Notes under the pieces: model-generated
The model's database searches: none
Told to the model about the DNA's origin: nothing
The model's input: only the letters and a program-made list of their open reading frames with translations
NCBI RefSeq assembly: GCF_022045235.1
Contig: NW_027266286.1
Location: forward strand, 75,392,001 to 75,456,000
Origin: Haliotis cracherodii
Taxonomy: Eukaryota
Direction: 5' to 3'
Length of the DNA: 64,000 nt
Shown here: one piece after another, positions 11,635 to 51,100 of the stretch
How positions within the stretch are numbered: position 1 is the first letter of the stretch
Layout: the number at the start of each line of letters is the position of its first letter
Made by a program: the position numbers and the translations under genes

Positions 11635-14600
11635 AACTACTACGCTTTCAGTACCGACATAACAACCATGTGGTAGTAAGGTCTGCCACATACGTCTCAT
11701 GGGACATCCAAGTAGCTCCATCTTGACGCAGGCATCGCCACGTGGGAAGGTCAGTCGTATCTGACGGGCAAGCACCTGCCTCCCTAGGGTCAGTGTCTGG
11801 GGCGTGGCAGGGTGAAGGTCGGGATCAACACGGAACTCCTGGACAGCAAACAGCACCACGTCAAGACACTTGGCGGACCTTTGTCCAATGTAGCAGACAG
11901 ACATCGTTATGTTGTATTTAAGAATCTCCCGAAATAAAAACTCACCCTTCCCGTGACCAGTCAAAGTCAACGCTATTTATTGCATGTAAGGCTTCCGGCC
12001 CATAAAAACAAAGGAGTTACATATAAGTAGTTTTACATATTCGGATATATACTAATGTTTAACAATTCGTATATGAGGGAAATTTCCTTTTTAACATATG
12101 TAACCAGTTTTAATATCACAGCATCATCTTTGTTAGAGAAAGGATACAGGATAACTCGACAGATGGCGCTCTGGTATAAACCTGTTTCTTAGATCACAAT
12201 ACTAAGGACATACAAAAGTAAAATGAATTTCATTTTCCATAGCTAAATGACATAATGGGCATAACCTCTTCGATGTTTCAGTGGACATTTTTTTATCATG
12301 ATATCTGACAATCCGAATTGAATAAATGGACGTCGAAGGGTTCTTGATGTTAATGCAGATAAGTATTTGTCTGGTTGAAAAAGACTCTTAAAAATTATAT
12401 ACAAGTCATGACTGTTTTCAAGAGTGGAATGCCATTCCTGATAAAACATATTTGCAGATTGTTCACGAAATTGTTTCAAATAGAGTTTAACACCACCATC
12501 TGTTTGGGTTTAACCATACAATTCCGTAGCCAAGAGGTTTCTCATATGTGATGTTCATGTTACTTTGACCATGCCATCTAAATGTACAAGCATATTATAA
12601 GCAAGTTTGGGGATTTGTCGTTCATGTATTCCAAAAATATTAAACCAGTATTTGAAGCATCTAACTTGGGAGTTGATATATCACACCATGACACAAGCTA
12701 CTCACAGTAGCGCTGCCTCCATCTTCTGTCCCCAGCAACGTGAAGCTGCCATTGCCCGTGCGGTAGCCCACGTTGAATGACGTCACAAAGCGGACGTTGC
12801 TGCCCTCTGTCCATCCCTGCACCACCACAGCGTCCACCACAGACGGAGTTAGGAGGTCTACCTACGCGACAACACAGTCCTGTTCAGTATTCATGTTGTG
12901 TGGAAGAGTAGTGGATGTTGTTAATATATGTGACGTAATTGTCTGTTCCAGCAAATGATTGAACGACAGGTAACAAAATATCATGAACTGTCGTGGCCCA
13001 TTTGAACTCCAGTGGACAGCGTCAAGAGCAACAAGGGGGAGATTCCAGACTCATTTCGACCTGACTTGATCCTAGGCAATGGTGGATCGAGCATGTTTAA
13101 AAGGATGTTCCTCTCTTAGTCTTTTTTACTGCACTTCATCATACTACATTTGTTTTTCAAAAGAGGAGAGGGGACCCCCTGGAGCCCCTGGATCCGCCTA
13201 TGCTTAGTGTGCATACCTATGTGGAAACATAATTTTCAACACAACTCTTGATTTAAGAACGGAGACATGCCTGTTTCAAGACATTGGACAGTGACAAACA
13301 TCTGCAAATTCGTGGGTGCACGAGCATCAACGCTAGGGCCTGTCACTTATAGCGGATGCCACTTACTATATTGACTATTTCTGTTGTAAGCCTGGCGCTG
13401 TGGGTTAAATATAACCTTTTGATTATTCTCTGATCTTGCGTGGTCATTTACTGATATCACAGTTCTTTGTTGTGGGTTAACCTCTGCGTTTCAAGTTAGA
13501 AATTACCTCGCAGCATGTACGAATATCACAGATGTACACAGTATTACGTCTAGATGTGTCCCCGGTAGTGTAGTGGACTGTGTTTACATCGCCAATCAGT
13601 GTGATACTGTTTCCCGTAATTATATATGTGCGTGCATATTGATGATGTTCTTGAAATGAAAGATGGCTTAACTAACATGTGTTTTTATTGAGAACTAAAA
13701 AGATGAAAACACGACAGTTATATATCGTTGCTTGTCAAAGCTAAGGTGTTTTTGGTTAAGAAATATGTTTGATCACACTTACGCAAATATTCAGATTGAT
13801 AAACAAAACACACACGTGATAACAGAATAACATTATTATCTCGATACTGAAGACGACGTAGCGTGATGATCCTGACAGTATACACTAAGGAAGGCACTGT
13901 TCGATCTACGTCGACATGTGCCCTTCGAGTTATGGAGATGCGATTGCAGTTGTGAGGTTACCTCTATATATGGCTGTGTGTCATCCGGGCTACTGCACCA
14001 TCCCTTTTCACGATGGAGGCGCGCATGCGTAGAGAGACTGTCACGACTGTCGGATGAGGAGAAAATCTGGAAGTCTTGTATATACCCTGATGTGACACCC
14101 ATTGTACGACCACACCCTGTGTCTGAAGTAGAAACAAGCCTGTATATACCTGATTTGACCCCCATTATATGACTACACCCTGTGTCTGAAGTAGAAACAA
14201 GCCTGTATATACCTGGTGTGACCCCCATTGTACGACCACACCCTGTGTCTGAAGTAGAAACAAGCCTGTATATACCTGGTGTGACCCCCATTGTACGACC
14301 ACACCCTGTGTCTGAAGTAGAAATAAGCCTGTATATACCTGGTGTGACCCCCATTGTACGACCACACTCTGTGTCTGAAGTAGAAACAAGCCTGTATATA
14401 CCTGATGTGACCCCCATTGTACGACCACACCCTGTGTCTGAAGTAGAAACAAGCCTGTATATACCTGATGTGACCCCCATTGTACGACCACACCCTGTGT
14501 CTGAAGTAGAAACAAGCCTGTATATATCTGATGTGATTACCATTGAATGACTACACCCTGTGTCTGAAGTAGAAACAAGCCTGTATATACCTGATGTGAC

Positions 14601-17600
14601 CCCCATTGTAAGACCACACCCTGTGTCTGAAGTAGAAACAAGCCTGTATATACCTGATTTGACCCCCATTATATGACTACACCCTGTGTCTGAAGTAGAA
14701 ACAAGCCTGTATATACCTGGTGTGACCCCCATTGTACGACCACACCCTGTGTCTGAAGTAGAAACAAGCCTGTATATACCTGATGTGACACCCATTGTAC
14801 GACCACACCCTGTGTCTGAAGTAGAAACAAGCCTGTATATATCTGATGTGATTACCATTGAATGACTACACCCTGTGTCTGAAGTAGAAACAAGCCTGTA
14901 TATACCTGATGTGACCCCCATTGTAAGACCACACCCTGTGTCTGAAGTAGAAACAAGCCTGTATATATCTGACGTGACCCCCATTGTACGACCACACCCT
15001 GTGTCTGAAGTAGAAACAAGCCTGTATATACCTGATGTGACCCCCATTGTACGACCACACCCTGTGTCTGAAGTAGAAACAAGCCTGTATATACCTGATG
15101 TGACCCCCATTGTTCGACCACACTCTGTGTCTGAAGTAGAAACAAGCCTGTATATACCTGATGTAACGAGATACACCCATACACTGTAGTGGTTTTTAGA
15201 ATTTAACACAGACGAGACTTCAAAACATGATTAGAAATGTATCTAAATCCTAAACGGAATACACATTTAGCTCTACACACATGAAATAAGCTATCGCATG
15301 ACAGCCTAAACACCTCCTAAACACAACATTCCCATAATGTAAACATGTTCAGAAATTAACACCTTAAAACATGTTTGGAATTTAAACTTGTTTAAAGTTA
15401 AAATATATTTAGAGTTTAAAAATGTTTACAATTTGAACATGTTTCAATAAAGTTCACATTATTAAGCAAAAAGTTAAAATCAAATATAGATACGATGTGC
15501 AAATCTGCTTCACAGGCACTTGCCTAACACATATACAGCGTACAGCGACCTGACACCTGTGACGACATGTCTCCGTGGCACAGGTGGTAGCGTAAAGGAC
15601 CACACATCAAGAGGTTGCGGGTTCGTATCCCACCCAGGATATGTGTTCATAAATGTGTTGTTGCTTATGACTAATAATGCATCTCTCATACAGCAAGCTG
15701 ACAATGAAAGTATATCTCATTACTACTATAGACTTTTAACGTATATGTTAGCACCACAAATTAATAAAATAGCGGTGAACACGCCCCCCTCGTCCACACA
15801 CACACAAACACACACAGACACGTTTTTGTTTCCCTTTTAAACGCAAATCAAAATATATACAGCACCCCTTTTTAAATTACCTACAGTGAATGTCAAGTGG
15901 TGTATATGTTACAGTCAATGCATATAATCAGTCAATATGTATATTGACAGAACACTTCAGTCAATATGTATATTGACAGAACACTTCAGTCATTATGTAT
16001 ATTGACAGAACACTTCAGTCAATATGTATATTGACAGAACACTTCAGTCAATATGTATATTGACAGAACACTCCAGTCAATATGTATATTGACTGATTCA
16101 CTCGGGCAATGTACGTATTGACTGAAAAATGAGACTGGATTTTAGACAGATTGACTGAAATAAATTACACAGTCACTCCTTAATATGATCTCAACATTTT
16201 AACTCGGATCTACTTTAAACTTACGAAGATCAAAGTAACTTCTGTAAGTAATTAAAAATGTTTTCACAATGAATTGTTTGGTTGTTCAGACATGGATAAT
16301 CCAGTCCTCTTTTACGTCACTTATCTTGATTCGTTTACACTTCTGATTTGAGAAGTAGAAGAGATTTGTACAGTTCTACAACCTCGCGGGTGATATTAGC
16401 ATATTCAGACTTCTACTCGGAGTTGATCTTCTCACAATATTGAATGACAAACTAATTCTGCCAGTGTATAGCTTGAATATAGCTGAGTACGGCGTTAAAC
16501 AAACAAACAAACAAACAAACAAACATATCCTGCAGCTAAATGAGTCTGAGGGAAAGTGTGAGATAAGAAGGACGTGGATAACCTGGCAATCCTGGTACAA
16601 GCAGGGACTGTAACGGTTTATCTGTTCAGTGAGCCTCCTACCTTCAACGTAGATTTCTATTTCCGTCACGTGCAGGCTGTTCAGTGTTCCTTGGTTCACC
16701 TCCGGATCCCAGTGCACGAAGTCCTGCACTGTGACGTAACGAGCTCTGATTGGCTGATCACATTCGAATGCAAAGACAGAAGTTTTATGTGTGCTGTGGG
16801 GTCCACCGCAAACATGGGCACCAAAGGTAAAGAAATCCCACTGTCGCCTGCTGAGCCACGTGACCGCATCCCAGAAGGCGTATGGTGTTGCCACTATGTG
16901 AGAGCAACAAAGAGTCTTAGTCAAAGTTGTTGCCAAGGAAACTGGAAAAATACTTTTTTTAAAATTCATAACTATCAAAAGGCACCAGTTCACAACTAGA
17001 CCTATGTATGTGCCAAGTTTGGTTAAGACATCTGTCACGTGTTTTGAGTTTTGCTCTGGAAACGAAACGTGGCGGAAGGAGGGACAACGGACAGCACCCA
17101 CTCCTACATGCCCCTTCAGCTTCGTGGCTGGGGGTAATAAACAGACATGAGTCATGTTCAGAGATCACCAATGGGTTGGAATCGGCCCCAGTATTGCAAA
17201 ACTAGATGCTTGTCGCATGAGGCAGCGGGCAGATTCAGGGAAGGGAGGTCACTCTCAGTTTATTGCACGGAACTTGACATTTAGTTATGTACATGAAGTA
17301 CAGTCAGACAATTACTCAAATAATAGCCTCAGCTTGAGACCGTAGCGCTGGGTCATCATCATGATGAAACACATTCACTCACGAGGGGCAGATAATCCGG
17401 AACTCACTGACATTTTAAGAAGGAAAACGTTAGAAATGTTAGGAAAGGGGCACGTTGCAAGCCACGAATCGCTTAGATAAAGCAAAGTAGTTGCTCAGCC
17501 CGGGGTCTGCAACAGCTCGAAGCGCTTACGCACTCTTCCAAAATTAAGAACGTAATAGAAGAGGCTCGATGACCAGCCGATAGATTTGTGACTACTTTGT

Positions 17601-20600
17601 AGATGTGGAGCAGACCGAGGATGGTGCGATGTTAACTGCCTTTGCTAATTTCCCAGTTGATCCAGTCAAGAATTTCTTGTTCCACTGTCAAACGCAGCCG
17701 CCATTTTGGTTTGAGAACGAAGCGACCTCAGCCACCGATTGTCGCGCTTGCAAGCGGCTGAAAATAAGCGCACCGTTTTAAGGCGAATCGCTGTGCATCG
17801 CTTGCAAGCGATTGGTGCTTTGCAACGCACCCAAGATTAACTCCACTGAAGGCGTTCAGATAACGTCGTGTTGAACGTCATATTGAATTTTCTCAACAAT
17901 AAAGCACTGCGACGTCATATGGGTTTAATTGAAAAATCAGCAATGATAATCGCTTAAATGCAAATGTGAACATATCGGGAAGTTATCACAATCACTCTAC
18001 CCAGAAGGGTAGTTTAAGGTGTTATCTTTGCTGGTGTGCAGGAACTGAAAATAGCAAACAAAGAGAAAACAGTTTATCATCCAAAACTGGCTCCCACAGG
18101 AGATATAGCTTGGGTGAAATTGCATGACAATGCATTGTGACATCATTGGTTACCATGACGTCACAATCAAATGACATCACTAATGGATCTGCTACTGAAG
18201 CTGTAAGCAGGACATTTTACGCTTAAGACACTGCTTATTACTGTCTACAAGCTAAAAAAGTTGGAAGAATGATGTTGGATGATAAATAAAATCTCACCCT
18301 CGTGTCTTTTGATACCAAATATATCAACACTCATTGATATATTTGATATACAAAGCCACTCGGTGAGATTATCTATATATTCTCACCGTTTGTAAGGTAT
18401 ACAATGACTTTGTGAACGATGACGTCACGCATGACGTCGACTTGTATCCAAGGTTCCACCAGAGGTCTCCGGCTAATGAAGGCAGCGTTAGCTGGAACAG
18501 TAATATGTGTACGTGTCGTTCTACTGTCGTCAGTAGCAAGCAAATAGTGTGTACAGTATACATCAAGCGCGTTTCATTGCAGTGACAGAACAAATCTTTC
18601 AGCACCATTGCTTTTCCACATGTTTTGCGATAGTTACTTGTTAAACCGTCAACGACAGATCTCCTGTCCGATCCCTCCGCCTCGTCGCAGGAATACAGCG
18701 GATAGCCCAGTGACGTCATTTTGTGCACGCGGGCAGATAACTCGGCTGAAACAAGTAAAAACAGACAATGTAGGCAATGTAACAAAGGTTTGAGATCGAC
18801 ACGACAGACACAGTGCAACTTCAAACGTCGCAGAGCACAACGTCATCAACGACAGACAGGAAGAGGAGAAGGTGTGACGTACGACAGCCAGGAAGTGGAG
18901 AAGGTGTGACGTACGACAGACAGGAAGAGGCGAAGGTGTGACGTACGACAGACAGGAAGAGGAGAAGGTGTGACGTACGACAGACAGGAAGTGGCGAAGG
19001 TGTGACGTACGACAGACAGGAAGAGGCGAAGGTGTGACGTACGACAGACAGGAAGTGGAGAAGGTGTGACGTACGACAGACAGGAAGTGGAGAAGGTGTG
19101 ACGTACGACAGACAGGAAGAGGCGAAGGTGTGACGTACGACAGACAGGAAGTGGAGAAGGTGTGACGTACGACAGACAGGAAGTGCAGAAGGTGTGACGT
19201 ACGACAGACAGGAAGATGCGAAGGTGTGACGTACGACAGACAGGAAGAGGAGAAGATGTGACGTACGACAGACAGGAAGTGGCGAAGGTGTGACGTACGA
19301 CAGACAGGAAGAGGAGAATGTGTGACGTACGACAGACAGGAAGAGGAGAAGGTGTGACGTACGACAGACAGGAAGAGGAGAATGTGTGACGTACGACAGA
19401 CAGGAAGTGGAGAAGGTGTGACGTACGACAGACAGGAAGAGGAGAAGGTGTGACGTACGACAGACAGGAAGAGGAGAAGGTGTGACGTACGACAGACAGG
19501 AAGAGGAGAATGTGTGACGTACGACAGACAGGAAGAGGAGAAGGTGTGACGTACGACAGACAGGAAGAGGAGAATGTGTGACGTACGACAGACAGGAAGA
19601 GGAGAAGGTGTGACGTACGACAGACAGGAAGAGGAGAAGGTGTGACGTACGACAGACAGGAAGAGGAGAATGTGTGACGTACGACAGACAGGAAGAGGAG
19701 AAGGTGTGACGTACGACAGACAGGAAGAGGAGAAGGCGTGACGTACGACAGACAGGAAGAGGAGAAGGTGTGACGTACGACAGACAGGAAGAGGAGAATG
19801 TGTGACGTACGACAGACAGGAAGAGGAGAAGGCGTGACGTACGACAGACAGGAAGAGGAGAAGGTGTGACGTACGACAGACAGGAAGAGGCGAAGGTGTG
19901 ACGTACGACAGACAGGAAGAGGAGAAGGTGTGACGTACGACAGACAGGAAGTGGAGAAGGTGTGACGTACGACAGACAGGAAGTGGCGAAGGTGTGACGT
20001 ACGACAGACAGGAAGAGGAGAAGGTGTGACGTACGACAGACAGGAAGTGGAGAAGGTGTGACGTACGACAGACAGGAAGAGGAGAAGGTGTGACGTACGA
20101 CAGACAGGAAGAGGAGAAGATGTGACGTACGACAGACAGGAAGTGGCGAAGGTGTGACGTACGACAGACAGGAAGAGGAGAAGGTGTGACGTACGACAGA
20201 CAGGAAGTGGAGAAGGTGTGACGTACGACAGACAGGAAGAGGCGAAGGTGTGACGTACGACAGACAGGAAGAGGAGAAGATGTGACGTACGACAGACAGG
20301 AAGTGGCGAAGGTGTGACGTACGACAGACAGGAAGAGGAGAAGGTGTGACGTACGACAGACAGGAACAGGACACAGTTGAAGGCCTTCCACAGATTCATA
20401 CTGCACGCAGACAGGCCCCCCGGGAGCGTCTTCCAGCGCCCGACAGTAGCGCGCCTCAAGCAAGGAGGGGGCCACGTCTCCACCGAGAGCGTTCCACTCC
20501 TTCGTCCTCGTCCATTCGTTGCAATGCCCGCCGTCAGATAATGTTTCATGACGTCCCCGGTAGGATGCGCCCTTGTCCTGTCTATCCCAGCATTCTCTCC

Positions 20601-23600
20601 GGGCTAATAAATGCAGAAACACGGATTAAAAGAGAATATAACAAATGCTTGTATTTTAGTAATACTCCACGAACGATGTTTTACGTGTTATGTCGACCGC
20701 ACCTGCACAGAATGTACAACACAATGTAATATGCGTACCATACGGCACATAGTGGCACAGCCCGAGGTTGAGGTCCGGGGTACCCGGTAGAAAGGTGAAC
20801 GTGTGGGAGTTGAGAATCATACCCTTCAGGGATGGGCAGGCCGTAAACGAAGTTCTCTGGGGGTGAAAAGCATATTTTAGTTACATAATAATTTCCTTGT
20901 TGAGAAAAAAGTGCCTGGGGCAAAAAACATGGTAAAAAAATTCTGGTCAAGGTTGCTGTATTTGTTTTTTTTTCCAGAACATATTGTACATCTGGATGAC
21001 ATGCGCACGCACTTATATACACTTCCCTCACCTCCCTATTCTTGTATGTACAGTGTTATGACGTCACCCAGCCTATGATGACGCAGAAAATATGACGTCA
21101 CAGTCCGCTTTAATAAGGTGGTTACGATGTCCGACATGGGCCCCGTTCCACAAAACGATCGTAGCGTTAGACGATCATAATTCCCATACTTTAATATAGA
21201 CTTAGTCAGTCTTAGAGTTAAGATCGCTTTGTGGAACGGGGCGATATTGCCTCATCATACCACGACCGCCTGCATCGTTCTTCAAGTTGATTTCCAATCG
21301 TGTGGCTGGTCCAGGTTTCGTGACTTAACATGCTGCCTTGACAAGGCTGGAATATTGCTGATTGCGGCGTTACAGAACATGCACTCACACACATAGATCA
21401 TTAACCATGTTTAAGCAGGGCAAAGCAGATCTAGACATTGGTGTTCGTAATGCGGGCACACCTGGAGTAACACGAACGCCGACGATGTTGGAAGGTGGAA
21501 GGCTTTGCTCGGGTCTTCGTCGTCCCTGCAGCATAGACCCAGACTAAAGGACAACGTATCTGCTGAAAAGTCGACAAGGATGGCGGCGTCTCTGTCTGTT
21601 GTCGTCACAGCGTAGTTTTCAAGTGTCATGGCGTCGTAGCGGAAATCTGTGGAGGGCGAAGGCTGGGCTGAGAGTTTTGCTGAGAGTGCCCAGGAAAGTG
21701 CTTGGTATGAGAAACATGAAGTAGTTGCCATAGGTACTGATAAGAGACTCGCTTCCGGGTTTCACATCGGACAATACATTGTAGCTGTTTCAAATCGAAC
21801 AATACATTGTAGCTGTTTCACATCGGACATTACATTGTACCTGTTTCACATCGGACATTACATTATAGCTGTTTCACATCGGACAATACATTGTACCTGT
21901 TTCACATCGGACATTACATTGTACCTGTTTCACATCGGACAATACATTGTACCTGTTTCACATCGGACATTACATTGTAGCTGTTACACATCGGACTATA
22001 CATTGTACCTGGTATATCAGATTATTCATTGTACCTGTTTCACATCGGACAATACATTGTACCTGTTTCACACCGGACAATACATTGTAGCTGTTTCACA
22101 TCGGACTATACATTGTACCTGTTTCACATCGGACTATACATTGTACCTGTTTCACATCGGACAGTACAATGTACCTGTTTCACATCGGACAATACATTAT
22201 ACCTGGTATATCGGACTATACATTGTACCTGTTTCACATCAGACAATACAATGTACCTGTTTCACATCGGACTATACATTGTAGCTGTTTCAAATCGGAC
22301 TATACATTGTACCTGTTTCACATCGGACTATACATTGTAGCTGTTTCACATCGGACAATACAGTGTACCTGTTTCACATCCGACAATACATTGTACCTGG
22401 TATATCGGACTATACATTGTACCTGTTTCACATCGGACAATACAATGTACCTGTTTCACATCGGACAATACATTGTAGCTGTTTCACATCGGACAATACA
22501 ATGTACCTGTTTCACATTGGACATTACATTGTACCTGTTTCACATCGGACATTACATTGTTCCTATTTCACATCGGACATTACATTGTACCTGTTTCACG
22601 TCGGACATTACATTATAGCTGTTTCACATCGGACTATACATTGTACCTGTTTCACATCGGACTATGCATTGTACCTGGTATATCGGACAATACATTGTAC
22701 TTGGTATATCGGACTAACCATTGCACCTGGTATATCGGAGTATACGTTGTACCTGGTATATCGGACTATACATTGTACCTGGTATATCGGACTATACATT
22801 GTACCTGGTATATGGGACTATACATTGTACCTGGTATATCGGTCAGACAGTTCACGTGGTTATTAATGTATCTTATGGGAGACACAGAAATCATAGCCCA
22901 GTTTGTCGTTTGTAATGATATCGAAATTCACATGGGCATACACGCCCGCATATATGATTACGGCCATACGGAAATATTCATAAGTCTAAACACATTGTTT
23001 GATCAAATCTGAACTGTTGCGTATTAATACTTGATATTATTTTGATAATCGTTGTTAGCATGCTAAAATATTGATATGTTGCAGTGATAGAGATTGTTGT
23101 ACGTTTGTTGGTCAGTGACAGCAAATAATTGAGTGATGTTGAATGATAACGAAATGTCAGTGGAATTTAGAATTACCTCCTCTGTTGTTTATCAACAAAA
23201 CAGGTTTGATCGTTGGGGAAGTTTCAGGATGGGACAGTTTCGATGAGGCTGAGTTTAGCAGACCGAGACGGGGAGAGTGGGGGTCTATGTCGGCCTGACT
23301 TGTCGAATCCCGGTTCGCGCCCATTATGTTTCTAGGTTTGTCAGCACCATGCCCGTGCTCCTGGTTTTCACCAAATTGGTAAACGTCTGAGACCTGCATC
23401 ACTTCGGGCTTTCCTCCGACATGAAACCGACACGCCGTGATGTGACGGGAATACTGCTAAAAGCGGCGTTAAAACCAACTCACTCACTCACATACTCGTT
23501 TTAGTACAAAACAGAAGAAGGCATGAACACCTAAAATACCTAAAAAAACTCTTTATTCAACTGCATAATCAGCCTTTGCCTCTCTGTGCTGGACATTAAC

Positions 23601-25800: not shown

Positions 25801-25844
25801 GCTTCTGGCCACAGACACGACCTGACTGGTTGTGGTACGTTTCC

Positions 25845-26121
25845 CAGTCCCCCACCGCTGTGTCCGAGTCCACCACTGCTGTGTCCGAGTCCCCCACCGC
25901 TGTGTCCGAGTCCCCCACCGCTGTGTCCGAGTCCCCCACCACTGTGTCCGAGTCCCCCACCGCTGTGTCCGAGTCCCCCACCGCTGTGTCCGAGGCCCCC
26001 ACCGCTGTGTCCGAGTCCCCCACCGCTGTGTCCGAGTCCCCCACCGCTGTGTCCGAGTCCCCCACCGCTGTGTCCGAGTCCACCACCGCTGTGTCCGAGT
26101 CCCCCACCGCTGTGTCCGAGT
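25845..26121. repeat. 21-bp GC-rich tandem repeat, ~13 copies, just upstream of the mosaic gene start codon
   Basis: gagtcccccaccgctgtgtcc units. Confidence 0.95.
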
Positions 26122-26617
26122 GCGCCCGTGGGGTGAAGGACACCACGTTCTGTACGTCGCCGTTGGATCAAGGGCACTACCTCCTGTACGACGCACTGCG
26201 TCGTGATGGCCGACAGACACATGATCAGTTATAAACAGAGACTTGTTTTGACTACAGTAAGTCGCGGCTTGGCCATCGACTGTATGTTGATGTTACTGAG
26301 TCCTCATCAGTGTTGTCGCAGTGGTGTCTGGTGTAGCTACGGCTGTGGTTGGTTGAAGTCGAGGTTATCAGTATAATCCCCCAGTGTCACCTGAGGCAAG
26401 GCTATTATTTTGATTGGGAACATGAAGACACTTCTTTATTGTTTCTCAACACCAGGGGTTGCGCCAAGATCAGGTGATAAAGTGGAAGTAACGCAGCGAG
26501 CCTTGCAGGAGAAATGATGATAACATGTGTCAGATTCATAAACAAGGAAAATAAGTCAATGCGATTTATAATTCACAGGATTTGTCGTGGACAAGGTGTG
26601 CACGTATGGGGGTCAGG

Positions 26618-28959: not shown

Positions 28960-29235
28960 TTTTGTTTGTTTATTTATTGTTTAACGCCGCACTGAGCAAA
29001 ATTCAAGCTATATGATGTCGGCCTTTAAAAAATCAAGTCTGGATCAGACAATCCAGTGATTGACACCATGAGCATCGATCCACGCATTTGGGATACAATG
29101 ACATGCATTAACCAAGTCAGGTCAGCGAGCCTTACCACCCGATCCTGTTAGTCGCCTCCTACGACAAGCATAGCCGCCTTTTACGGCAAGAATGGGTTGC
29201 TGAAGGCCTTTTCTAACCTGGATCTTCACGGGTCT
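28960..29235 (-). mobile_element. SINE (family C; copies at ~4010-4150, 24930-25152, 30205-30470, 39015-39130, 51160-51370)
   Basis: Shared gtttaacgccgcac...cgacaagcat...acccggatcttcacgggtc body with (aaac)n tail. Confidence 0.75.
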
Positions 29236-33280: not shown

Positions 33281-33326
33281 GGTTGCCAGTCAGTGTCTGG
33301 TTCTACTCGGTCAGCTAAGGTTTATC

Positions 33327-36300
33327 ATGTTGCTGTTGGTCGTAGCTCTCATCGTTCCTGCCCTGGGGGCCCGCCCAGGATTCCACTCCACGGGCAGTCT
33401 AGAGTGGAGAGACTGTGGTATGTAAATTGATTGAGTGAATTAATATTTTAACATGGCAATGTCAGCACTACAGCGCCGAGAACACATCCTACATTGTTGG
33501 TGGTTCGATTCCCAAATTCGCCATGAATACGATTCTAGATTTGTCTGCACCATATCCATGTGATGTGTTCTCTCAAGTCCAAACTTTAAACCATGTAGTC
33601 CTTCGGGCTTTCCTCCACGTCAAGATGACACGCCGTCATATAACTGAAATAGTGTTCAAAGGGGGGTTAAACTCACTTCACTCACTCACTCGCATATTGT
33701 AGACACTGATCATACGTTTTGAAAAGATACATGGGGATGGTTCGCAAGCAGTGATAAAGACCCCATCCACCAACAGATGTATAAAACGTTTGACGTGACT
33801 TTGTTGGCACAATACACGATGACTAGGAGGTAACAGTTGTATCATAATAAAGTCCGAATCTGTTGAAATCATTCAGATGAAAGATAACTATTAATAATCA
33901 ATCACACGTACATGCAAAGTTGATATCGATAGAATTTGTTGATTTTAATCGCCTACCAATGTCCCGAATCTATCGGAGTCTATACCCTGTGAGGCATGTC
34001 ACTATTCTATACGAGCCTATCAGAAACTATATACTGTAAGCTTTGCCTCGAAATGTTATGTGGACATGAGTGTATCTAATTCCATATACTGTAAGTGATG
34101 GCTCGAAATGTTATGTGGACATGCGTGTTTCTAATTCTATTTACTTTAAGGTATGGCTCGAAATGTTATGTGGGCGTGAGCGTCTCTAATTCTATAAACT
34201 GTAAGGCATCGCTCGAAATGTTATGTGAACATGAGTGCATCTAATTCCATATAATGTAAGTCATGGCTCGAAATGTTATGTGGACATGCGTGTTTCTAAT
34301 TCTATTTACTTCAAGGCATGGCTCGAAATGTTATGTGGACATGAGTGTATCAAATTCCATATACTCTAAGTCATGGCTCGAGATGTTATGTGGACATGAG
34401 TGTATCTAATTCTATTTACTTCAAGGCATGGCTCGAAATGTTATGTGGACATGAGTGTATCAAATTCCATATACTCTAAGTCATGGCTCGAGATGTTATG
34501 TGGACATGAGTGTATCTAATTCTATTTACTCTAAGGCATGGCTCGAAATGTTATGTGAACATGCGTGTTTCTAATTCTATTTACTTCAAGGCATGGCTCG
34601 AAATGTTATGTGGACATGAGTGTATCAAATTCCATATACTCTAAGTCATGGCTCGAGATGTTATGTGAACATGAGTGTATCTAATTCTATAAACTGTAAG
34701 GCATGGCTCGAAATGTTATGTGGACATTTCTGAGAATGTATGTTATTTGTCCAATGTCCTTTCATGGAGTTAGTTTGAAGCAAGCTATGTTTTTCCTTGA
34801 GATATTTATGTCATGTGTACTTCCATGTCAGGTGTGGGCTCCTCCTGGATTTCCGTGAAGCAGTTCGACATCAAGCCCAGCCCCATTGTGATCCCCGGAG
34901 ATATGACCGTGTCTCTTGATGGCACCATCAGCCACAAACTCGCAGACCAGGTCACACTGGACGTTCTCTTTGAGAAGTCGCTGCTCGGACGTTTCACCAA
35001 AGTGCCCTGCAAGGCTGATGTTGGCACATGGTAAGGGCCCTGCAAGTCTGATGTTGGCACGTGGTAAGTGCCCTGCAAGTCTGATGTTGGCACTTGGTAA
35101 GGGCTGAGAAAGTCAGTTGTTGGCACGTGGTAAGTGCCCTGCAAGTCTGATGTTGGCACATGGTAAGTGCCCTGCAAGTCAGATGTTGGCACATGGTAAG
35201 TGCCCTGCAAGTCTGATGTTGGCACGTGGTAAGTGCCCTGCAAGGCTGATGTTGGCACATGGTAAGTGCCCTGCAAGTCTGATGTTGGCACGTGGTAAGT
35301 GCCCTGCAAGTCAGATGTTGTCACTTGGTAAGGGCTGAGAAAGTCAGTTGTTGGCACGTGGTAAGTGCCCTGCAAGTCTGATGTTGGCACATGGTAAGTG
35401 CCCTGCAAGTCTGATGTTGGCACTTGGTAAGGGCTGAGAAAGTCAGTTGTTGGCACGTGGTAAGTGCCCTGCAAGTCAGACGTTGGCACGTGGTAAGTGC
35501 CCTGCAATTCTGACGTTGGCACGTGGCAAGTGCCCTGCAAGTCCGATGTTGGCACGTTCTGAGTAAGCTTGTTGTCAGCACATGGTAAGTACTGAGTAAG
35601 TTATTATTGCCGAATTTTGCCTACACGTCATCGTCAGGCACGCCTAGCCTTGTGTCGACAGCGAGGCTCAGAAGACAAGACTGGTCAGGCATGCTATTCA
35701 AGTTTCATCTTGACAGCTCTGATGGTCGTGCAAGGGCCTATGTGCATCTTGGAGAACGTTTTAGCGACGCCTGCGTTACTCAACGTCGTCTGTTTGAGGA
35801 TGGGAGTGTAATGGCATGGGGTGGTATCACAACTCATGGGAGAACACAACTCATCGTTGCTAATGAACATTTTAATGGTGTACGCTATCGGGGCGACATC
35901 GTCAGAGATCATATTCTACCCTTTGAGCAAATGCAGGGACATAACTTCACATGGCAGCAGGATAATGCCCGCAGACTTTTGAGGCAGAATAAAATTGCTG
36001 TACTGTCATGACCAGCTGTTTCTCGAGACCCATACAACATGTCAGGGATGAAATGGAACGATGCTTACGACAGGACCAGAACCAGCGGGTAACGCGAACT
36101 CAAGAGTAACATCCCTCTGGCTGTTTTCAATCATCTGGTGTCTTCAGTGTACCGCTGCTGCTTCTCTTGTATGAACACAAATTGTGGTCACACCCAACAT
36201 TGACATCGTATTTGAGTTGCTGCACCGCCCCTCCTGGTACCAAGTCTTTGTCAATACATTTCTCATGATAGAACATTAATAAGACGAATGACCAAATAGT

Positions 36301-36994: not shown

Positions 36995-37267
36995 AGTGAA
37001 ACACTTGTACAGTGAAGATAATAAATAACAACATATGTGTTTCTGATTGTCTTTGTAGAACAAATCCTTGCTAAATGTTACTGACATTTCATATTTAGTT
37101 GAAATAAAACTAGGAAGACATTATTAATTTTAGTATGTTTGGAAACATTCGACACGATTAGTCTCTATTGTGAATATACAACGTGGATGCCAGAGAATAA
37201 CTAAGCTTACTTATCCAAGGGAGACAAATGCTATTGGGCGTAAAAGGCGACATAGCGGTGAACATGA

Positions 37268-41100: not shown

Positions 41101-41254
41101 GGGGATACTCGATATTAGTTTCTTGTAATTGTCGTGAAAATGATGAACGAATTAGGAACACATTACAGCGGCAGTGAGGTATGACAGAAACTGTTATGAC
41201 CGCCAAAGATCTTGAAAGATGACAGATGTAAGATTGGAAGTTAAACATTGGAAC

Positions 41255-41650
41255 ATTCATTCATTCCACGAAGAATACTGCGTATCAGTCTCCCAATGGC
41301 GATTTGGGGCAATCTATCCCATTCTTCTTGGAGCACCTGGTTAAGTTCAGCCAACGTGGTCAGCAGCCACGGTATTCTATGGATGTGATGCTGCAGGAGC
41401 CGAGCATTGACGATCTGTGAAGACGAGCACGGGTGTTGTCGTCCTGAAAGACAAAACGTCGACCCACACACCTTGTAAACAACTAAGGGTGTCAGTATGT
41501 TGTCCTGATAGTACTGCCTAGTGACCCTTCCTTGTACAACATGGAGTGGGGTTTACTCAGTCGTACACCTAACCCCATAACCGATCCACCACCAAATCTG
41601 TTATAAGGTCTCGAGTCGACATTGGCTTGACGTTCAATTCGACGTTGTCA
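41255..41650 (-). mobile_element. Tc1 transposase fragment
   Basis: LAELNQVLQEEWDRLPQIAIGRLIRS. Confidence 0.7.
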
Positions 41651-41654
41651 GTCA

Positions 41655-43720: not shown

Positions 43721-44208
43721 TTGTACTCAGCTCTGTCCCTGAATCAGTGTATAGCATAGTTAAACTTCACTTTCACAAGCTATGCTCACCAGATGGGGGA
43801 TTTTCCCTGCGTCTCTTATATGCCAAGTACCGATGTTCATTCACAAAATTAGTAAAAAATAATAAATATCTGTAATTACTTATCTATAAAATACTGCTCT
43901 GAGAAGTTACATTTGATTTTTGTATGTTTAATGTGCTTTGCAGGAGTGTGACATTATATGCCTACATTAGTCACGTTTATAAAATGTTATAGCTGGTTTC
44001 TTGTATTAACAGTCGTCGCTTAAATGCACAAATGCTGACGCTCATTGTGTATCAAGCTATGCCGATGACCTCTATGGCGGCATATGCGAACTGACAGAAA
44101 CTGCAGACAGTGCAAAGTCCATACACAAATAAATCAATGCATTAAACACCAGTCACAGTGTGAGTTAAAAGACACTTTCTCCTCTGAAGGACTTGGCTGA
44201 AATGTATG

Positions 44209-44302
44209 GTGAGTGAGTGAGTGAGTGAGTGAGTTGGTGGGTGAGTTGGTGGGTGGGTTTGAGTGAGTGAGTGAGTGAGTGAGTGAGTGAGTGAGTGAGT
44301 GA
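44209..44302. repeat. (GAGT)n microsatellite
   Basis: gtgagtgagt run. Confidence 0.95.
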
Positions 44303-45108
44303 GCTTTATATCAATCCACATGTCATCTCCACACTGACAAAGTGAGCCAAGGACATCTACTCCAGCATCCTTGATTTAAACATGAACTTTATCATCTGCA
44401 CCATGTCTTCACCAACCTCAACCAGTATCCTACCGAACTAGGAGGACCATCCCACAACACTCCAGCCCAAACCCAAACCGACCTGACCAGACCGTACCTA
44501 TATTGGCAAGATTTCACATCAAATCATCAGATTACTGAGGCAGCAAGCATGCATTGATACCATCTTCACTGGCATCCCATCCCTCAGGACCATCCTCCAC
44601 GCCACAACCCTCCCTCCAGGAGGCAACTCGACAAAGGAGATTAATTGTAACTGTAGCGATTCGTACATTGGTGAAACCAGCAAAGACTCACTACCTCGCT
44701 ACCGAACATCAGAAAGAAACGTCGCTAAATGTTAAAACCCCTAAAGTTGTACATGCTATGCATAAAGTTGTATGCCTTGTCAGCCCTTATAAATATCTGA
44801 TATAAAATATGTTTCAAAATGCTGTGTCTATACTGTTACAACATCAGCTATGTACCATTTAGGAAACGTTCAAACAAAAGTCCTTCTGTGTCTTTGCGTC
44901 CATTCACCGTCATCTTTCTGTTGCACATATAATCCAGGAGACAATATTTAATCTACCATGTGTTGTGTCCCAGAGCGGGCGTTTGACGTCTAAGGTAACG
45001 AAAGTATTGCAGCTCCTGCAGTGCATGCTTCCTAAAGCATATGCTATCTGCTACTTGACATCCAGGGCATCTGTGAACCCGATTCGGCGAACCCCTGCAC
45101 GCCCCTTG

Positions 45109-45147
45109 GTCACGTGGACTCTCCCTCTCTATCGGAGTGTATATACA
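45109..45147 (+). promoter_or_regulatory. E-box/CLEAR-like plus TATA-like motifs, copy 2
   Basis: gtcacgtgg...tgtatataca conserved although the adjacent upstream segment is deleted in this copy. Confidence 0.5.
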
Positions 45148-45194
45148 GGTTGCCAGTCAGTGTCTGGCTCTACTCGGTCAGTGTAAGGTTTATC

Positions 45195-48100
45195 ATGTTG
45201 CTGTTGGTCGTAGCTCTCATCGTTCCTGCCCTGGGGGCCCGCACAGGATTCACAGACACCGGCAGTCTAGAGTGGAGAGACTGTGGTATGTAAATTGATT
45301 GAGTGAATTAATATTTTAACGTGGCAATATCAGCATTACAGCGACGAGAACACATCCTACATAGTTGGAGGTTCGATTCGCAGATTCGCCCTGAATACGA
45401 TTCATGGTTTGTCTGCACCATATCCATGCGATGTGTTCTCTAAAGTCCAAACGTCAAAACTTGCAGACCTTCGGGATTTCCTCCACGTCAAGATGACACG
45501 CCGTCATATAACTGAAATAGTGTTCAAAGGGGCGCTAAACTTCACTCACTCACTCGCATATTGTAGACTCTGATCATACGTTTTGAAAAGACATCATTGG
45601 GATGGTTCTTAAGCAGTGATAAAGATCGAATCAACCAACAGATGTATAAAACGTTTGACGTGACTTTGTTGGCACTCACTCACAAATACATGATGTATCA
45701 TCATTGGGATGGTTCCCAACCAGTGATAAATAAAGAATACTAAACGAGCTCCCGTGTAATACCAATGTTATGAAACGAGTGAAAAGTTCTGGTATCTGAC
45801 GAGCGAAAGCGAATCAGATACCCCAGGTATTTACGAGTTTCATAACATTGGTTGTACTAGGGAACGAGTTTAGTATTTTATTTATCACTTGCCATTTATA
45901 ACGTTTTTAGAGTATGCCATGTGACGTCAGCCTAGCAACAAGGTTGCGCGGGTCATCGAGTGTGCATAAGCTCCTCTCAGTGATCATCTCCACAGGAATA
46001 TCGTTGAATAAGCCAAGGGATGTTGAGTGCTTTCAATATTTGTTCGTGAAACGTGTTCCGAGGATACACAAGCACGCGTTTTGATATTACACAATGTTTA
46101 ATACAGCTGTATGTTTATTAAACGGGTGATGTCTTCACGGGTAAGTAATAAAGATAAAGATCCCACCAACTTACATGAAAAAATACCCTAAATACTTGAT
46201 GATATTTCTTGGCTGAATTAGGGTATGCCTTGATAAGGTATGTGGATATGTTTGCATATAGCTGGACCAGTTGCATTTTCGTGAACTAAATTTAGAACCT
46301 AGCCATGTGGTTCTTTGAAATAGTTATGTTATTTGTCTTCACATGTCAGGTGTTGGGGATTCCTGGGTTAATGTGACGACGTTCGACATCACCCCCACCC
46401 CCATCAAAGTTCCCGGAGATATGACCGTGACCCTTGATGGAACTATCAGCCACGATCTCACTGACCAGGTCACACTGGACGTTCTCATGGAGAAGAAGCT
46501 GCTCAACATTTTCACCAGGGTGCCCTGCCAGGGCAGTGTCGGCACATGGTAAGTGTTGAGCAAGTCAGATGTCGGCACATGGTAAGTGTTGAGCAAGTCA
46601 GATGTCGGCACATGGTAAGTGTTGAGCAAGTCAGATGTCGGCACATGGTATGTGTTGAGCAAGTCAGATGTTGGCACATGCTAAGTGTTGAGCAAGTGTG
46701 ATGTTGGAATATGGTAAGTGCTGAGCAAGTGTGATGTTAGCACATGGTAAGTGTTGAGCAAGTGTGATGTTGGAATATGGTAATTGCTGAGCAAGTGTGA
46801 TGTTAGCACATGGTAAGTGTTGAGCAAGTCAGATGTTGGCACATGGTAAGTGTTGAGCAATTTAGATGTCGGCACGTGGCAAGTGTTAAGGAAGTCAGAT
46901 GTTGGAATATGGTAATTGCTGAGCAAGTCAGATGTCGGCACATGGCAAGTGTTGAGCAAGTCAGATGTTGGCACATGGCAAGTGTTAAGGAAGTCAGATG
47001 TTGGCACTTGGTTAGTGTTGAGCAAGTGTGATGTTGGAATATGGTAAGTGCTGAGCAAGTCAGATGTCGGCACATGGTAAGTGTTGAGCAAGTGTGATGG
47101 CTGCACATGGTAAGTGTTGAGCAAGTGTGATGGCTGCACATGGTAAGTGTTGAGCAAGTGTGATGGCTGCACATGGTAAGTGTTGAGCAAGTGTGATGGC
47201 TGCACATGGTAATTGTTGAACAAGTCAGATATTGGCACATGGCAAGTGTTAAGGAAGTCAGATGTTGGCACATGGTTAGTGTTGAGCAAGTGTGATGTTG
47301 GAATATGGTAAGTGCTGAGCAAGTGTGATGTTAGCACATGGTAAGTGTTGAGCAAGTGTGATGTTGGAATATGGTAATTGCTGAGCAAGTCAGATGTTGG
47401 CACATGGCAAGTGTTGAGCAAGTGTGATGTTGGCACATGGTAATTGCTGAGCAAGTCAGATGTTGGCACATGGTAAGTGTTGAGCATGTCAGATGTCGGC
47501 ACATGGTAAGTGTTGAGCAATTCAGATGTCGGCACATGGTAAGTGTTGAGCAAAACAGATGTCAGCTCATTGTAAGTGCTGAGCAAGTCAGATGTTGGAA
47601 CATGGTAAGTGTTGAGCGAGTCAGATGTTGGCACATGGTAAGTGTTGAGCAAGTCAGATGTCGGCACGTGGCAAGTGTTAGGAAGTCAGATGTCGCCACA
47701 TGGTAAGTGTTGAGCAAGTGTGATGTTGGAACATGGTAATCGCTGAGCAAGTCAGATGTCAGCACATGGTAAGTATTGAGCAAGTCAGATGTCGGCACAT
47801 GGTTAGTGTTGAGCAAGTCAGATGTCGGCTCAAGGTAAGTGTTGAGCAAGTCAGATGTCGGCACATGGTAAGTGTTGAGCAAGTGTGATGGCTGCACATG
47901 GTAAGTGTTGAGCAAGTCAGATGTTGGAATATGGCAAGTGTTGAGCAAGTCAGATGTTGGCACATGGTAAGTGTTGAGCAAGTCAGATGTTGGCACATGG
48001 CAAGTGTTGAGCAAGTCAGATGTTAGCACATGGCAAGTGTTAAGGAAGTCAGATGTTAGCACATGGTAAGTGTTGAGCAAGTCAGATGTTGGCATATGGT

Positions 48101-51100
48101 TAGTGTTGAGCAAGTCAGATGTTAGCACATGGTAAGTGTTGAGCAAGTGTGATGTTGGAATATGGTAAGTGCTGAGCAAGTCAGATGTTGGCACATGGTA
48201 AGTGTTGAGCAAGTCAGATGTTGGAACATGATAAGTGTTGAGCAAGTCAGATGTCGGCACATGGTAAGTGTTGAGCAAGTCAGATGTCGGCACATGGGAA
48301 GTGTTGAGCAAGTCAGATGTTGGCACATGGTAAGTGTTGAGCAAGTCAGATGTCGGCACATGGTAAGTGCTGAGCAAGTCAGATGTCGGCACATGGTAAG
48401 TGTTGAGCAAGTCAGATGTTGGAACATGATAAGTGTTGAGCAAGTCAGATGTCGGCACATGGTAAGTGTTGAGCAAGTCAGATGTCTGCACATGGCAAGT
48501 GTTGAGCAAGTCAGATGTTGGCACATGGCAAGTGTTAAGGAAGTCAGATGTTGGCACATGGTTAGTGTTGAGCAAGTCAGATGTTGGCACATGGTATGTG
48601 TTGAGCAAGTCAGATGTTAGCACATGGTAAGTGTTGAGCAAGTGTGATGTTGGAATATGGTAATTGCTGAGCAAGTGTGATGTCAGCACATGGTAAGTGT
48701 TGAGCAAGACAGATGTTGGCACATGGTATGTGTTGAGCAAGTCAGATGTTGGCACATGGTAAATGTTGAGCAAGTCAGATGTCGGCACATGGCAAATGTT
48801 GAGCAAGTCAGATGTTAGCACATGGTAAGTGTTGAGCAAGTCAGATGTTGGCACATGGTATGTGTTGGGCAAGTCAGATGTTAGCACATGGTATGTGTTG
48901 AGCAAGTCAGATGTTAGCACATGGTAAGTGTTGAGCAAGTCAGATGTTAGCACATGGTAAGTGTTGAGCAAGTGTGATGTTGGAACATGGTAATCGCTGA
49001 GCAAGTCAGATGTCAGCACATGGTAAGTATTGAGCAAGTCAGATGTCGGCACATGGTTAGTGTTGAGCAAGTCAGATGTCGGCTCAAGGTAAGTGTTGAG
49101 CAAGTCAGATGTCGGCACATGGTAAGTGTTGAGCAAGTGTGATGGCTGCACATGGTAAGTGTTGAGCAAGTCAGATGTTGGAATATGGCAAGTGTTGAGC
49201 AAGTCAGATGTTGGCACATGGTAAGTGTTGAGCAAGTCAGATGTTGGCACATGGCAAGTGTTGAGCAAGTCAGATGTTAGCACATGGCAAGTGTTAAGGA
49301 AGTCAGATGTTAGCACATGGTAAGTGTTGAGCAAGTCAGATGTTGGCATATGGTTAGTGTTGAGCAAGTCAGATGTTAGCACATGGTAAGTGTTGAGCAA
49401 GTGTGATGTTGGAATATGGTAAGTGCTGAGCAAGTCAGATGTTGGCACATGGTAAGTGTTGAGCAAGTCAGATGTTGGAACATGATAAGTGTTGAGCAAG
49501 TCAGATGTCGGCACATGGTAAGTGTTGAGCAAGTCAGATGTCGGCACATGGGAAGTGTTGAGCAAGTCAGATGTTGGCACATGGTAAGTGTTGAGCAAGT
49601 CAGATGTCGGCACATGGTAAGTGCTGAGCAAGTCAGATGTCGGCACATGGTAAGTGTTGAGCAAGTCAGATGTTGGAACATGATAAGTGTTGAGCAAGTC
49701 AGATGTCGGCACATGGTAAGTGTTGAGCAAGTCAGATGTCGGCACATGGCAAGTGTTGAGCAAGTCAGATGTTGGCACATGGCAAGTGTTAAGGAAGTCA
49801 GATGTTGGCACATGGTTAGTGTTGAGCAAGTCAGATGTTGGCACATGGTATGTGTTGAGCAAGTCAGATGTTAGCACATGGTAAGTGTTGAGCAAGTGTG
49901 ATGTTGGAATATGGTAATTGCTGAGCAAGTGTGATGTCAGCACATGGTAAGTGTTGAGCAAGACAGATGTTGGCACATGGTATGTGTTGAGCAAGTCAGA
50001 TGTTGGCACATGGTAAATGTTGAGCAAGTCAGATGTCGGCACATGGCAAATGTTGAGCAAGTCAGATGTTAGCACATGGTAAGTGTTGAGCAAGTCAGAT
50101 GTTGGCACATGGTATGTGTTGGGCAAGTCAGATGTTAGCACATGGTATGTGTTGAGCAAGTCAGATGTTAGCACATGGTAAGTGTTGAGCAAGTCAGATG
50201 TTAGCACATGGTAAGTGTTGAGCAAGTCAGATGTTGGCACATGGTATGTGTTGAGCAAGTCAGATGTTAGCACATGGTATGTGTTGAGCAAGTCAGATGT
50301 TAGCACATGGCAAATGTTGAGCAAGTCAGATGTTGGCACATGGTATGTGTTGAGCAAGTCAGATGTTAGCACATGGTAAGTGTTGAGCAAGTGTGATGTT
50401 GGAATATGGTAATTGCTGAGCAAGTGTGATGTCAGCACATGGTAAGTGTTGAGCAAGACAGATGTTGGCACATGGTATGTGTTGAGCAAGTCAGATGTTG
50501 GCACATGGTAAATGTTGAGCAAGTCAGATGTCGGCACATGGCAAATGTTGAGCAAGTCAGATGTTAGCACATGGTAAGTGTTGAGCAAGTGTGATGTTGG
50601 AATATGGTAAGTGCTGAGCAAGTCAGATGTTGGAACATGGCAAGTGTTGAGCAAGTGTGATGTTGGAATATGGTAATTGCTGAATAAATCTGATGTTGGC
50701 ACACGGTAAGTGTTGAGCAAGTCTGAAGTTGGCAATTGGTAAGTGCTATGTTTCGGAACCGAGTGGAAAGTCAGTGTTAAAAACCTTTCTCAGCTGTCCG
50801 CAAGAATTTGGTGTTGGGCTTAAAGGAAAGAGTTCATCGACCCAGAAAACATATAAAACATATCAGCCACACGCCAACAAATACACGATGTGCGAAAACC
50901 TTGTTTCACAACCATGAGCGTTTCCAGCTAAGACTGACCTGTGGTGAGCAGAGATTCAAGCTGGTATTTTACGTCGTGAGAGAAGTTTCCATTTAGGCCT
51001 TACGTGAGGTTAGCGGAATTTCTAGCACAGGTGAATGCAGTTTCCAGCTGAGTTATACATGAACTGTACGGGGTTGCAGACGTTTGTGAGGTGAGCCGCT

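What the first reader, a model, noticed from the sequence alone, without database searches (positions are those of the whole stretch)
14085..50746. Recurrent splice-junction minisatellites: four large arrays in two unrelated genes are amplified splice sites
Seen in sequence: four arrays in this window are each built from an exon-intron boundary, with the canonical splice dinucleotide in most units. They are the kringle donor (47 x 32 bp), the discoidin acceptor (17 x 63 bp), the GM2A-1 donor (~17 x 33 bp) and the GM2A-2 donor (~127 x 33 bp). In every case the array starts exactly at the exon edge and grows only into the intron, so the native protein stays intact. Inference: four events among roughly 55 splice junctions looks too many for random placement. 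Possible explanations are a mutational process targeted at splice junctions (e.g. transcription/spliceosome-coupled R-loop slippage) or selection for arrays of splice sites acting as tunable splicing or length switches and U1/U2AF landing pads. I do not know of this described as a system, but cannot search the literature.
Basis: partly seen in the sequence, partly recalled or inferred. Interest (0 to 1): 0.9.

Follow-up and report, generated by a model that had tools for sequence, protein, structure and literature searches.

The report
Splice-junction minisatellites in abalone-like genes
Four long tandem repeats here are amplified copies of an exon edge plus its splice site, a repeat type already described as 'mirage' minisatellites in amphioxus and in human F7, and in this repeat-rich mollusc genome they occur at close to the chance rate.

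Summary
Tandem Repeats Finder gives 63 bp x 17.3, 32 bp x 47.6, 33 bp x 16.9 and 33 bp x 127.6. In each array the unit spans a real exon-intron junction: the start of a discoidin exon, the end of a kringle exon, and the same exon end in two ML-domain (GM2A-like) paralogs.

- The two ML arrays share unit length, register and 27 of 33 bases, so there are three origins, not four.
- Minisatellites cover 29% of the window. Random seeding predicts about 1-1.5 junction-spanning arrays here.
- In 137 kb around dynein exons elsewhere in this genome I found 7 junction-spanning arrays among 53. About 3.5-4.4 were expected. The excess is 1.6-2.7-fold and marginal.
- In the 127-unit array the GT decays no more slowly than other positions.
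- Sense-strand GC skew is mixed, which does not fit the R-loop idea.

This type is already described as 'mirage' minisatellites in amphioxus and as the human F7 intron 7 VNTR. The scan also found it on other DNA of this genome, where another agent reached the same classification. The genome carries sperm-lysin genes, so it is probably an abalone. I could get no RNA data. Most likely these are tolerated by-products of very active minisatellite formation.

The parts
14077..15164 (-). Acceptor-junction minisatellite, 63 bp x 17.3. The unit is 18 nt of intron end (polypyrimidine tract plus CAG) followed by 45 nt of exon start. It is in frame (21 codons) and stop-free.
   Evidence: TRF; sequence; AG intact in 16/16 units
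13962..14122 (-). Native exon that starts a discoidin (F5/8 type C)-like domain (CGRTMGVTSGYIQDFQIFSSS...). Its first 46 nt lie inside the array's last copy.
   Evidence: Translation. Pfam F5_F8_type_C is seen only weakly (E 0.019, profile positions 39-82) in the next exon, 12664-12861. The domain start is read by eye.
18849..20371 (-). Donor-junction minisatellite, 32 bp x 47.6. The unit is about 12-16 nt of exon end, then GTACGT, then about 16 nt of intron.
   Evidence: TRF; sequence; GT intact in 47/47 units
20355..20595 (-). Kringle exon. The exon and the Pfam Kringle match both end at the last cysteine.
   Evidence: Pfam PF00051, E 5.4e-7, profile positions 3-79 of 79; coordinates
34831..35030 (+). 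ML-domain (GM2A-like) paralog 1: the exon whose tail seeded the array.
   Evidence: Pfam PF02221, E 1.1e-3; sequence
35000..35557 (+). Donor-junction minisatellite, 33 bp x 16.9. The unit is the exon tail plus GTAAGT. Every unit has an in-frame TAA.
   Evidence: TRF; sequence; unit profile
46349..46548 (+). ML-domain paralog 2: the homologous exon.
   Evidence: Pfam PF02221, E 2.8e-4; sequence
46537..50745 (+). Donor-junction minisatellite, 33 bp x 127.6, homologous to the paralog-1 array. It contains a near-perfect 1,254-bp internal duplication at about 47680-50190.
   Evidence: TRF; sequence; GT intact in 99/126 units; lag analysis
62781..63014 (+). ML-domain paralog 3: the same exon end and donor, with only one degenerate unit (GTAAGTGTTGAGTAAGGTTGATGCTTG...) and no array. 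It serves as an internal control.
   Evidence: Sequence; Pfam; no TRF row at this site

Best explanation
These are 'mirage'-type minisatellites. A short segment (32-63 bp) that happened to span a splice junction was duplicated in tandem, then amplified by slippage or unequal exchange.

The genome makes minisatellites at a very high rate: about 0.4 arrays per kb in genic DNA, and 29% of this window. Many seeding events therefore fall on junctions by chance.

Such arrays survive because the copy that stays contiguous with the exon keeps the only productive splice site. The other copies sit in the intron as decoys.
- In the ML genes, use of a later donor would bring in an in-frame TAA.
- In the kringle gene, most later donors would shift the frame.

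Shown here: the anatomy, the high base rate, the shared origin of the two ML arrays, and the lack of extra conservation of GT.

Inferred from amphioxus and human F7, not shown here: that only the exon-proximal site is used.
For: - Anatomy of all four arrays.
- Array density: 27 arrays covering 29% of the window. In 137 kb around dynein exons, 53 arrays at 0.39 per kb.
- Base rate: in that unbiased sample, 7 arrays span a junction and 4 more end within 6 nt of one. That is 13-21% of arrays, the same share as in the window (4/27). Random seeding predicts 3.5-4.7 of 53.
- Position of the junction within the unit is scattered. The exon share runs from about 10% of the unit (24/230) to about 77% (34/44), for example 12/31, 16/31, 18/31, 53/82 and 45/63. 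Scatter is what random seeding predicts; a junction-directed break would not give it.
- ML-2 array: GT intact in 99/126 units, and +2 T matches the consensus in 83% of units against about 92% on average.
- Whole genome: triple periodic GGTAAGT gives 5,329 matches, against 6,813 for the reversed control. In the first 16.9 Mb of contig 1 there are about 12-15 arrays against 8-9.
- Unequal exchange is visible as a 1,254-bp perfect internal duplication.
- Literature: amphioxus mirages do not disturb splicing (PMC3087553, PMC3902484). In human F7 IVS7 the most upstream of identical donors is used (PMC1557585).
- Another agent of this scan reports normal splicing for one such array in this genome (unchecked by me).
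Against: - A mild excess at junctions remains. The automated test gives 10-11 arrays against 3.8-4.2 expected (P about 0.002). The offset control gives 8 against 2.9 (P 0.01).
- The excess is concentrated in long arrays: about 5 of 16 touch a junction against about 1.5 expected.
- Two dynein intron positions each carry independent arrays in two ancient paralogs (ELPDNLK| and PLTDR|).
- The ML array has outlived a gene triplication whose exons are now only 75-78% identical, which is long for a purely neutral array.
- There is no RNA evidence from this window.
Confidence: 0.7

Rival explanations
1. There is a real junction bias. Either tandem duplications arise preferentially at splice junctions, or junction-anchored arrays last longer. 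In the second case the exon-proximal unit is held constant by selection and keeps re-seeding the array.
For: - A 1.6-2.7-fold excess in the dynein sample, strongest for long arrays.
- Arrays recur at the same intron position in ancient paralogs.
- The ML array persists across a gene triplication.
- Many first-reader notes of the same thing in this genome. Their number is roughly what the base rate predicts.
Against: - For strictly spanning arrays the excess is not significant: 7 against about 4.4, P about 0.16.
- The junction sits at scattered places within the units.
- Sense-strand GC skew is mixed, which argues against R-loop slippage.
- Periodic strong-donor arrays are not in bulk excess over the reversed control.
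Confidence: 0.2
2. The arrays are functional. They could be tunable sets of splice sites or U1/U2AF landing pads. For the in-frame 63-bp acceptor array, they could be a source of variable-length protein (21 aa per unit).
For: - The discoidin array is in frame and stop-free.
- The kringle array is stop-free in the two sense frames I translated across its first units. A first-reader note says all three.
- GT/AG are intact in most units.
Against: - In the young arrays nearly all positions are intact, so GT/AG conservation says nothing.
- In the old ML-2 array GT decays like any other position.
- The ML units carry an in-frame TAA, and the 32-bp unit shifts the frame.
- ML paralog 3 has no array at the same junction.
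- The amphioxus and F7 precedents show silent decoys.
Confidence: 0.07
3. Some or all of the array length is an assembly artefact.
For: A 1,254-bp stretch inside the ML-2 array is repeated at essentially 100% identity. This could be a mis-join.
Against: - The arrays have structured internal variants.
- Homologous arrays occur in two paralogs.
- The same anatomy occurs at many unrelated loci.
Confidence: 0.03

Closest known systems
'Mirage' minisatellites of amphioxus (Adh3, globins BflGb6/BflGb9, troponin C, PGBD5; PMC3087553, PMC3902484, and Canestro et al. 2002 as cited there)
   Same: Both are minisatellite-like tandem duplications whose unit spans an intron-exon boundary. Both occur at donor or acceptor sides, carry AG/GT in most copies, and have unit lengths of tens of bp. 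Several unrelated genes are affected.
   Different: This is a mollusc, probably an abalone, not a cephalochordate. Copy numbers are far higher (up to 127, against a handful). Normal splicing and length instability were shown in amphioxus but could not be tested here.
Human F7 intron 7 37-bp VNTR (PMC1557585)
   Same: The first repeat element spans the exon-donor boundary, so the authentic donor is followed by identical pseudo-donors.
   Different: F7 has 6-9 copies and experimental proof that only the most upstream donor is used. Here there are 17-127 copies and no transcript data.
Intron gain by tandem duplication of an AGGT-containing segment (Rogers model; my own knowledge, and the model discussed in PMC3087553)
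   Same: Tandem duplication creates extra donor/acceptor pairs. The internal copies of the 63-bp array contain both an acceptor (TTCAG|) and a donor-like CAG|GTATAT.
   Different: Here an existing junction is copied and no new intron is shown. The 27-nt spacing between those sites is probably too short for an intron.
Ordinary polymorphic intronic minisatellites of abalone (27-bp unit in TSSK1-like intron 3, PMC6905558)
   Same: Abundant, long arrays within introns, with units of tens of bp.
   Different: That array is not reported to include a splice junction.

Membership tests
Mirage minisatellite | Head-to-tail tandem array with minisatellite-sized units | tested here: met
   TRF: periods 63, 32, 33 and 33; 17-128 copies; 86-95% matches
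Mirage minisatellite | The repeat unit contains both exonic and intronic sequence of one exon-intron boundary, including the splice signal | tested here: met
   Exon identity from Pfam. Exon edges are inferred from reading frame, domain ends and consensus, not from RNA.
Mirage minisatellite | Only the terminal copy is contiguous with the rest of the exon; the others lie in the intron | tested here: met
   The ML units carry an in-frame TAA. The open frame into the domain continues only from the terminal copy.
Mirage minisatellite | Regular splicing is not disturbed (authentic site used) | not testable with these tools
Mirage minisatellite | Length instability or polymorphism between haplotypes | not testable with these tools
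   Only one assembly was available. The homologue search was blank. The 1,254-bp internal duplication indicates recent unequal exchange.
F7-IVS7-type donor VNTR | The authentic donor is followed by pseudo-donors of identical sequence | tested here: met
   Kringle: 47/47 units carry GTACGT. ML-2: 63/126 units carry the full G|GTAAGT.
F7-IVS7-type donor VNTR | Only the most upstream donor is selected | not testable with these tools
   No RNA data. The in-frame TAA (ML) and the 32-nt period (kringle) mean later donors would not give the native protein.
Coding tandem repeat (variable-length protein region) | The repeat lies within the mature coding sequence | tested here: not met
   ML units contain an in-frame stop, and the kringle unit is not a multiple of 3. 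For the 63-bp array the point stays open: it is in frame and stop-free, with no RNA.

The most novel reading that the evidence does not exclude
Splice junctions in this mollusc may be true hot spots, or long-term refuges, for minisatellites. Junction-anchored arrays would then arise or persist 2-4 times more often than elsewhere in introns and grow larger. The cause would be either a break-prone state at exon edges or re-seeding from the selectively frozen exon-proximal unit. This would give natural series of up to 127 identical competing donors.
Probability: 0.2. Interest if true: 0.6.

Novelty: new member of a known kind. Interest (0 to 1): 0.33.

Why it matters
The claim of a new splice-site amplification system does not hold. 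The repeat type is already named, and its frequency here is largely explained by the very high minisatellite load.

Two things are still worth keeping:
- Mirage repeats have so far been discussed as an amphioxus peculiarity. Here they are common in what appears to be an abalone, which suggests they appear wherever minisatellite formation is intense.
- Arrays of 47 and 127 near-identical donors, and of 17 in-frame acceptors, are extreme natural test cases for how the spliceosome picks the exon-proximal site. They also bear on intron-gain-by-duplication models.

A proper genome-wide count could settle whether the residual two-fold excess is real.

Tried and rejected
- **RNA evidence.** No human-likeness was stated.
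- **Larger genome sample.** The myosin search returned coordinates only. The unbiased sample is therefore limited to L001-L060 (137 kb).
- **Homologues elsewhere.** A search with the ML-2 exon found nothing, so there is no cross-individual or cross-species comparison.
- **Organism.** A paper search for the dispersed 22-mer was blank. The H. discus hannai TSSK1 minisatellite consensus has no match in this genome (uninformative). Egg_lysin did match.
- **Periodic GGTAAGT against its reversed control**. The match counts are dominated by a few giant arrays, so I use them only as a weak check.
- **R-loop idea.** Sense-strand GC skew of 12 junction arrays is mixed.
- **A possible fifth junction array at 21759-22833.** Rejected: it ends about 110 nt before the likely acceptor of the ApeC exon.
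- **Spliced models.** Exons were searched singly by reference.
Full report
**Observation**

- 14077-15164: 63 bp x 17.3
- 18849-20371: 32 bp x 47.6
- 35000-35557: 33 bp x 16.9
- 46537-50745: 33 bp x 127.6

It also returns about two dozen other minisatellites. Together, 27 arrays cover 18.5 kb, or 29% of the window.

**Anatomy of the four arrays**

ML (GM2A-like) arrays, plus strand. The exon ends ...GTTGGCACATG|GTAAG, and the unit is that exon tail plus GTAAGT. Every unit has an in-frame TAA.

Kringle array, minus strand. The exon ends ...CCTGTCTGTC|GTACGT, at the last cysteine of a Pfam Kringle match that runs to the last profile position (E 5.4e-7). The 32-bp unit repeats that junction.

Discoidin array, minus strand. 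The unit is TTGTTTCTACTTCAG| plus the first 45 nt of an exon. That exon reads CGRTMGVTSGYIQDFQIFSSS..., the start of an F5/8 type C-like domain. The Pfam support is only weak, in the next exon (E 0.019).

The ML-domain assignment is weak but consistent in three paralogs (E 3e-4 to 2.5e-3).

The splice dinucleotide is present in 47/47, 16/16, about 15/16 and 99/126 units.

The terminal copy overlaps the exon by 14-46 nt, so the unit spans the junction and does not begin at it.

**How many independent events**

The two ML arrays have the same period and register. Their consensus units share 27 of 33 bases. The ML-2 units match the ML-1 exon tail (23/29) better than their own exon tail (18/29).

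The third paralog, at 62781-62980, has the same donor followed by a single degenerate unit and no array. The three exons are 75-78% identical.

The array therefore most likely predates the gene triplication. The window holds three origins, not four.

**Is this more than chance?**

Three or four were observed. That is unremarkable for a window chosen after the fact.

For an unbiased test I used whole-genome family searches for two dynein heavy-chain domains, PF12774 and PF12781. These delivered 60 loci (137 kb) centred on 96 exon hits from about 18 ancient paralogs.
- TRF finds 53 arrays with period 7 or more, at 0.39 per kb.
- The automated test counts arrays touching an exon-hit end. It gives 10-11 against 3.8-4.2 expected (P about 0.002).
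- The empirical control compares the junction bin with equal bins deeper in the same introns. It gives 8 against 2.9 (P 0.01).

After reading each case, seven arrays truly span a junction:
- Donors: C56 31x27 (LPDNLK|GTGAGT), C56 44x14, C56 31x2.2, C2 31x2.7, C4 230x2, C67 about 125x2
- Acceptor: C3 82x11

Four more end within 6 nt of a junction.

Expected numbers are 3.5-4.4 for strict spanning and 4.7-5.9 when the abutting arrays are included. The excess is therefore 1.6-2.7-fold, with P between 0.01 and 0.16. It is concentrated in long arrays.

Junction arrays are 13-21% of arrays near these genes, the same share as in the window (4/27). The window is typical of the genome, not exceptional.

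A whole-genome pattern count points the same way. Three periodic GGTAAGT give 5,329 matches, against 6,813 for the reversed control. In the first 16.9 Mb of contig 1 there are about 12-15 arrays against 8-9. This shows no large bulk excess.

In the ML-2 array, the only one old enough to vary, GT is intact in 79% of units. The +2 T matches the consensus in 83% of units, against a mean of about 92% for all positions. The splice dinucleotide is therefore not preferentially kept.

Sense-strand GC skew of 12 junction arrays ranges from -0.49 to +0.68. R-loop-driven slippage would predict consistently G-rich sense strands.

The junction lies at scattered positions within the units, from 10% to about 77% exon. 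This fits random seeding, not a break at the junction.

Expansion by unequal exchange is visible as a near-perfect 1,254-bp (38-unit) duplication inside the ML-2 array.

**What is known**

Full-text searches show the type is described. [quoted passage not shown] They do not disturb splicing and have been proposed as a route to intron gain (PMC3087553; PMC3902484).

The human F7 gene has a 37-bp VNTR whose first element spans the exon 7 donor. Only the most upstream of the identical donors is used (PMC1557585).

I found no description for molluscs. Abalone introns are reported to hold long polymorphic minisatellites (PMC6905558).

**Organism**

The genome is 1.18 Gb in 80 contigs. It has collinear exons matching the sperm-lysin family PF01303 over the cut-off, with a paralog 50 kb away. 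As far as I know, that family is specific to abalone and related vetigastropods.

The nearest Atlas clusters for the ApeC exon are mostly molluscan. Another agent of this scan calls the genome abalone. It classified similar arrays elsewhere in the genome as mirages and reports normal splicing in one tested case (which I did not check). Many first-reader notes report the same thing in other windows.

**Conclusion**

The arrays are real and are built from splice junctions. They are new members of a known kind, in a new lineage and at extreme copy number.

The best reading is tolerated by-products of very active minisatellite formation. They survive because the exon-proximal site keeps working and the other copies are decoys.

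A residual two-fold junction excess and the long persistence of the ML array are not explained. They keep a junction-bias hypothesis alive at about 20%.

**Limits**
- No RNA data.
- The genome sample was capped at 137 kb.
- Exon edges are inferred from frames, domain ends and consensus.
- Exons were searched singly.

Noticed in passing
L025 (G000:C56:15944403-15945243) and L011/L026 (G000:C8:28297464-28298056); L017 (C2:53554532-53554616) and L015 (C4:26337581-26338041): Two homologous intron positions of anciently diverged dynein heavy-chain paralogs (after ELPDNLK and after ITPLTDR) each carry independent arrays at the donor in two different paralogs. This could be chance or a site-specific propensity.
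   Followed up: partly
window 47680-50190: Inside the 33-bp array, a 1,254-bp block (38 units) is repeated in tandem at essentially 100% identity. It is either a very recent unequal exchange or an assembly duplication.
   Followed up: partly
window 34027-34727 and 62378-62681: A second, non-junction minisatellite (55-bp and 69-bp units sharing ATGTTATGTGGACAT...GGCATG) lies about 80-100 nt upstream of the same exon in ML paralogs 1 and 3. About one copy is seen upstream of paralog 2. It too seems older than the gene triplication.
   Followed up: no
window 4036-4144 and 29149-29190; also L009 (C56:41907397-41907438): A 22-bp unit (ACGACAAGCATAGTCGCCTCTT) recurs as short arrays at dispersed places in the genome. 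Related-looking 22-bp units occur in L022/L030 (C78:53755630-53755674) and L057 (C23:53093880-53093932). It is probably part of a mobile element. No paper holds the sequence.
   Followed up: partly
G000:C12:64.59-64.96 Mb: A tandem cluster of about 17 myosin-head (PF00063) loci on both strands, which looks like a large expansion of myosin heavy-chain genes.
   Followed up: no
G000:C7:25242357-25249832 and 25190671-25199471: Two neighbouring genes match the sperm-lysin family (Egg_lysin PF01303), consistent with lysin and its paralog. This points to an abalone or related vetigastropod.
   Followed up: partly
window 2496-3551 (-), 35589-36008 (+), 41244-41647 (-), 60039-60257 (+): Open frames that look like Tc1/mariner-type transposase remnants by eye. 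One sits inside the ML-1 intron just after the array. None was checked against a family library.
   Followed up: no
window 14123-15164 (-): Array copies differ from the native exon by one G (CAGGTATAT instead of CAGGGTATAT). Each internal copy therefore carries a donor-like CAG|GTATAT 36 nt after its acceptor, giving potential 36-nt micro-exons separated by 27 nt.
   Followed up: no
window 21414-24016 (-) and 25136-25387 (-): The minus-strand gene region also encodes an apextrin C-terminal (ApeC) domain split over two or more exons, plus a weak teneurin-like EGF match. These lie upstream of the kringle exon on the minus strand, an unusual domain mix.
   Followed up: partly
window 25842-26121 (-): A 21-bp x 13 array lies inside a 195-codon open frame (repeat TRTQRWG). 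Whether it is coding is unknown, and Pfam finds nothing.
   Followed up: no
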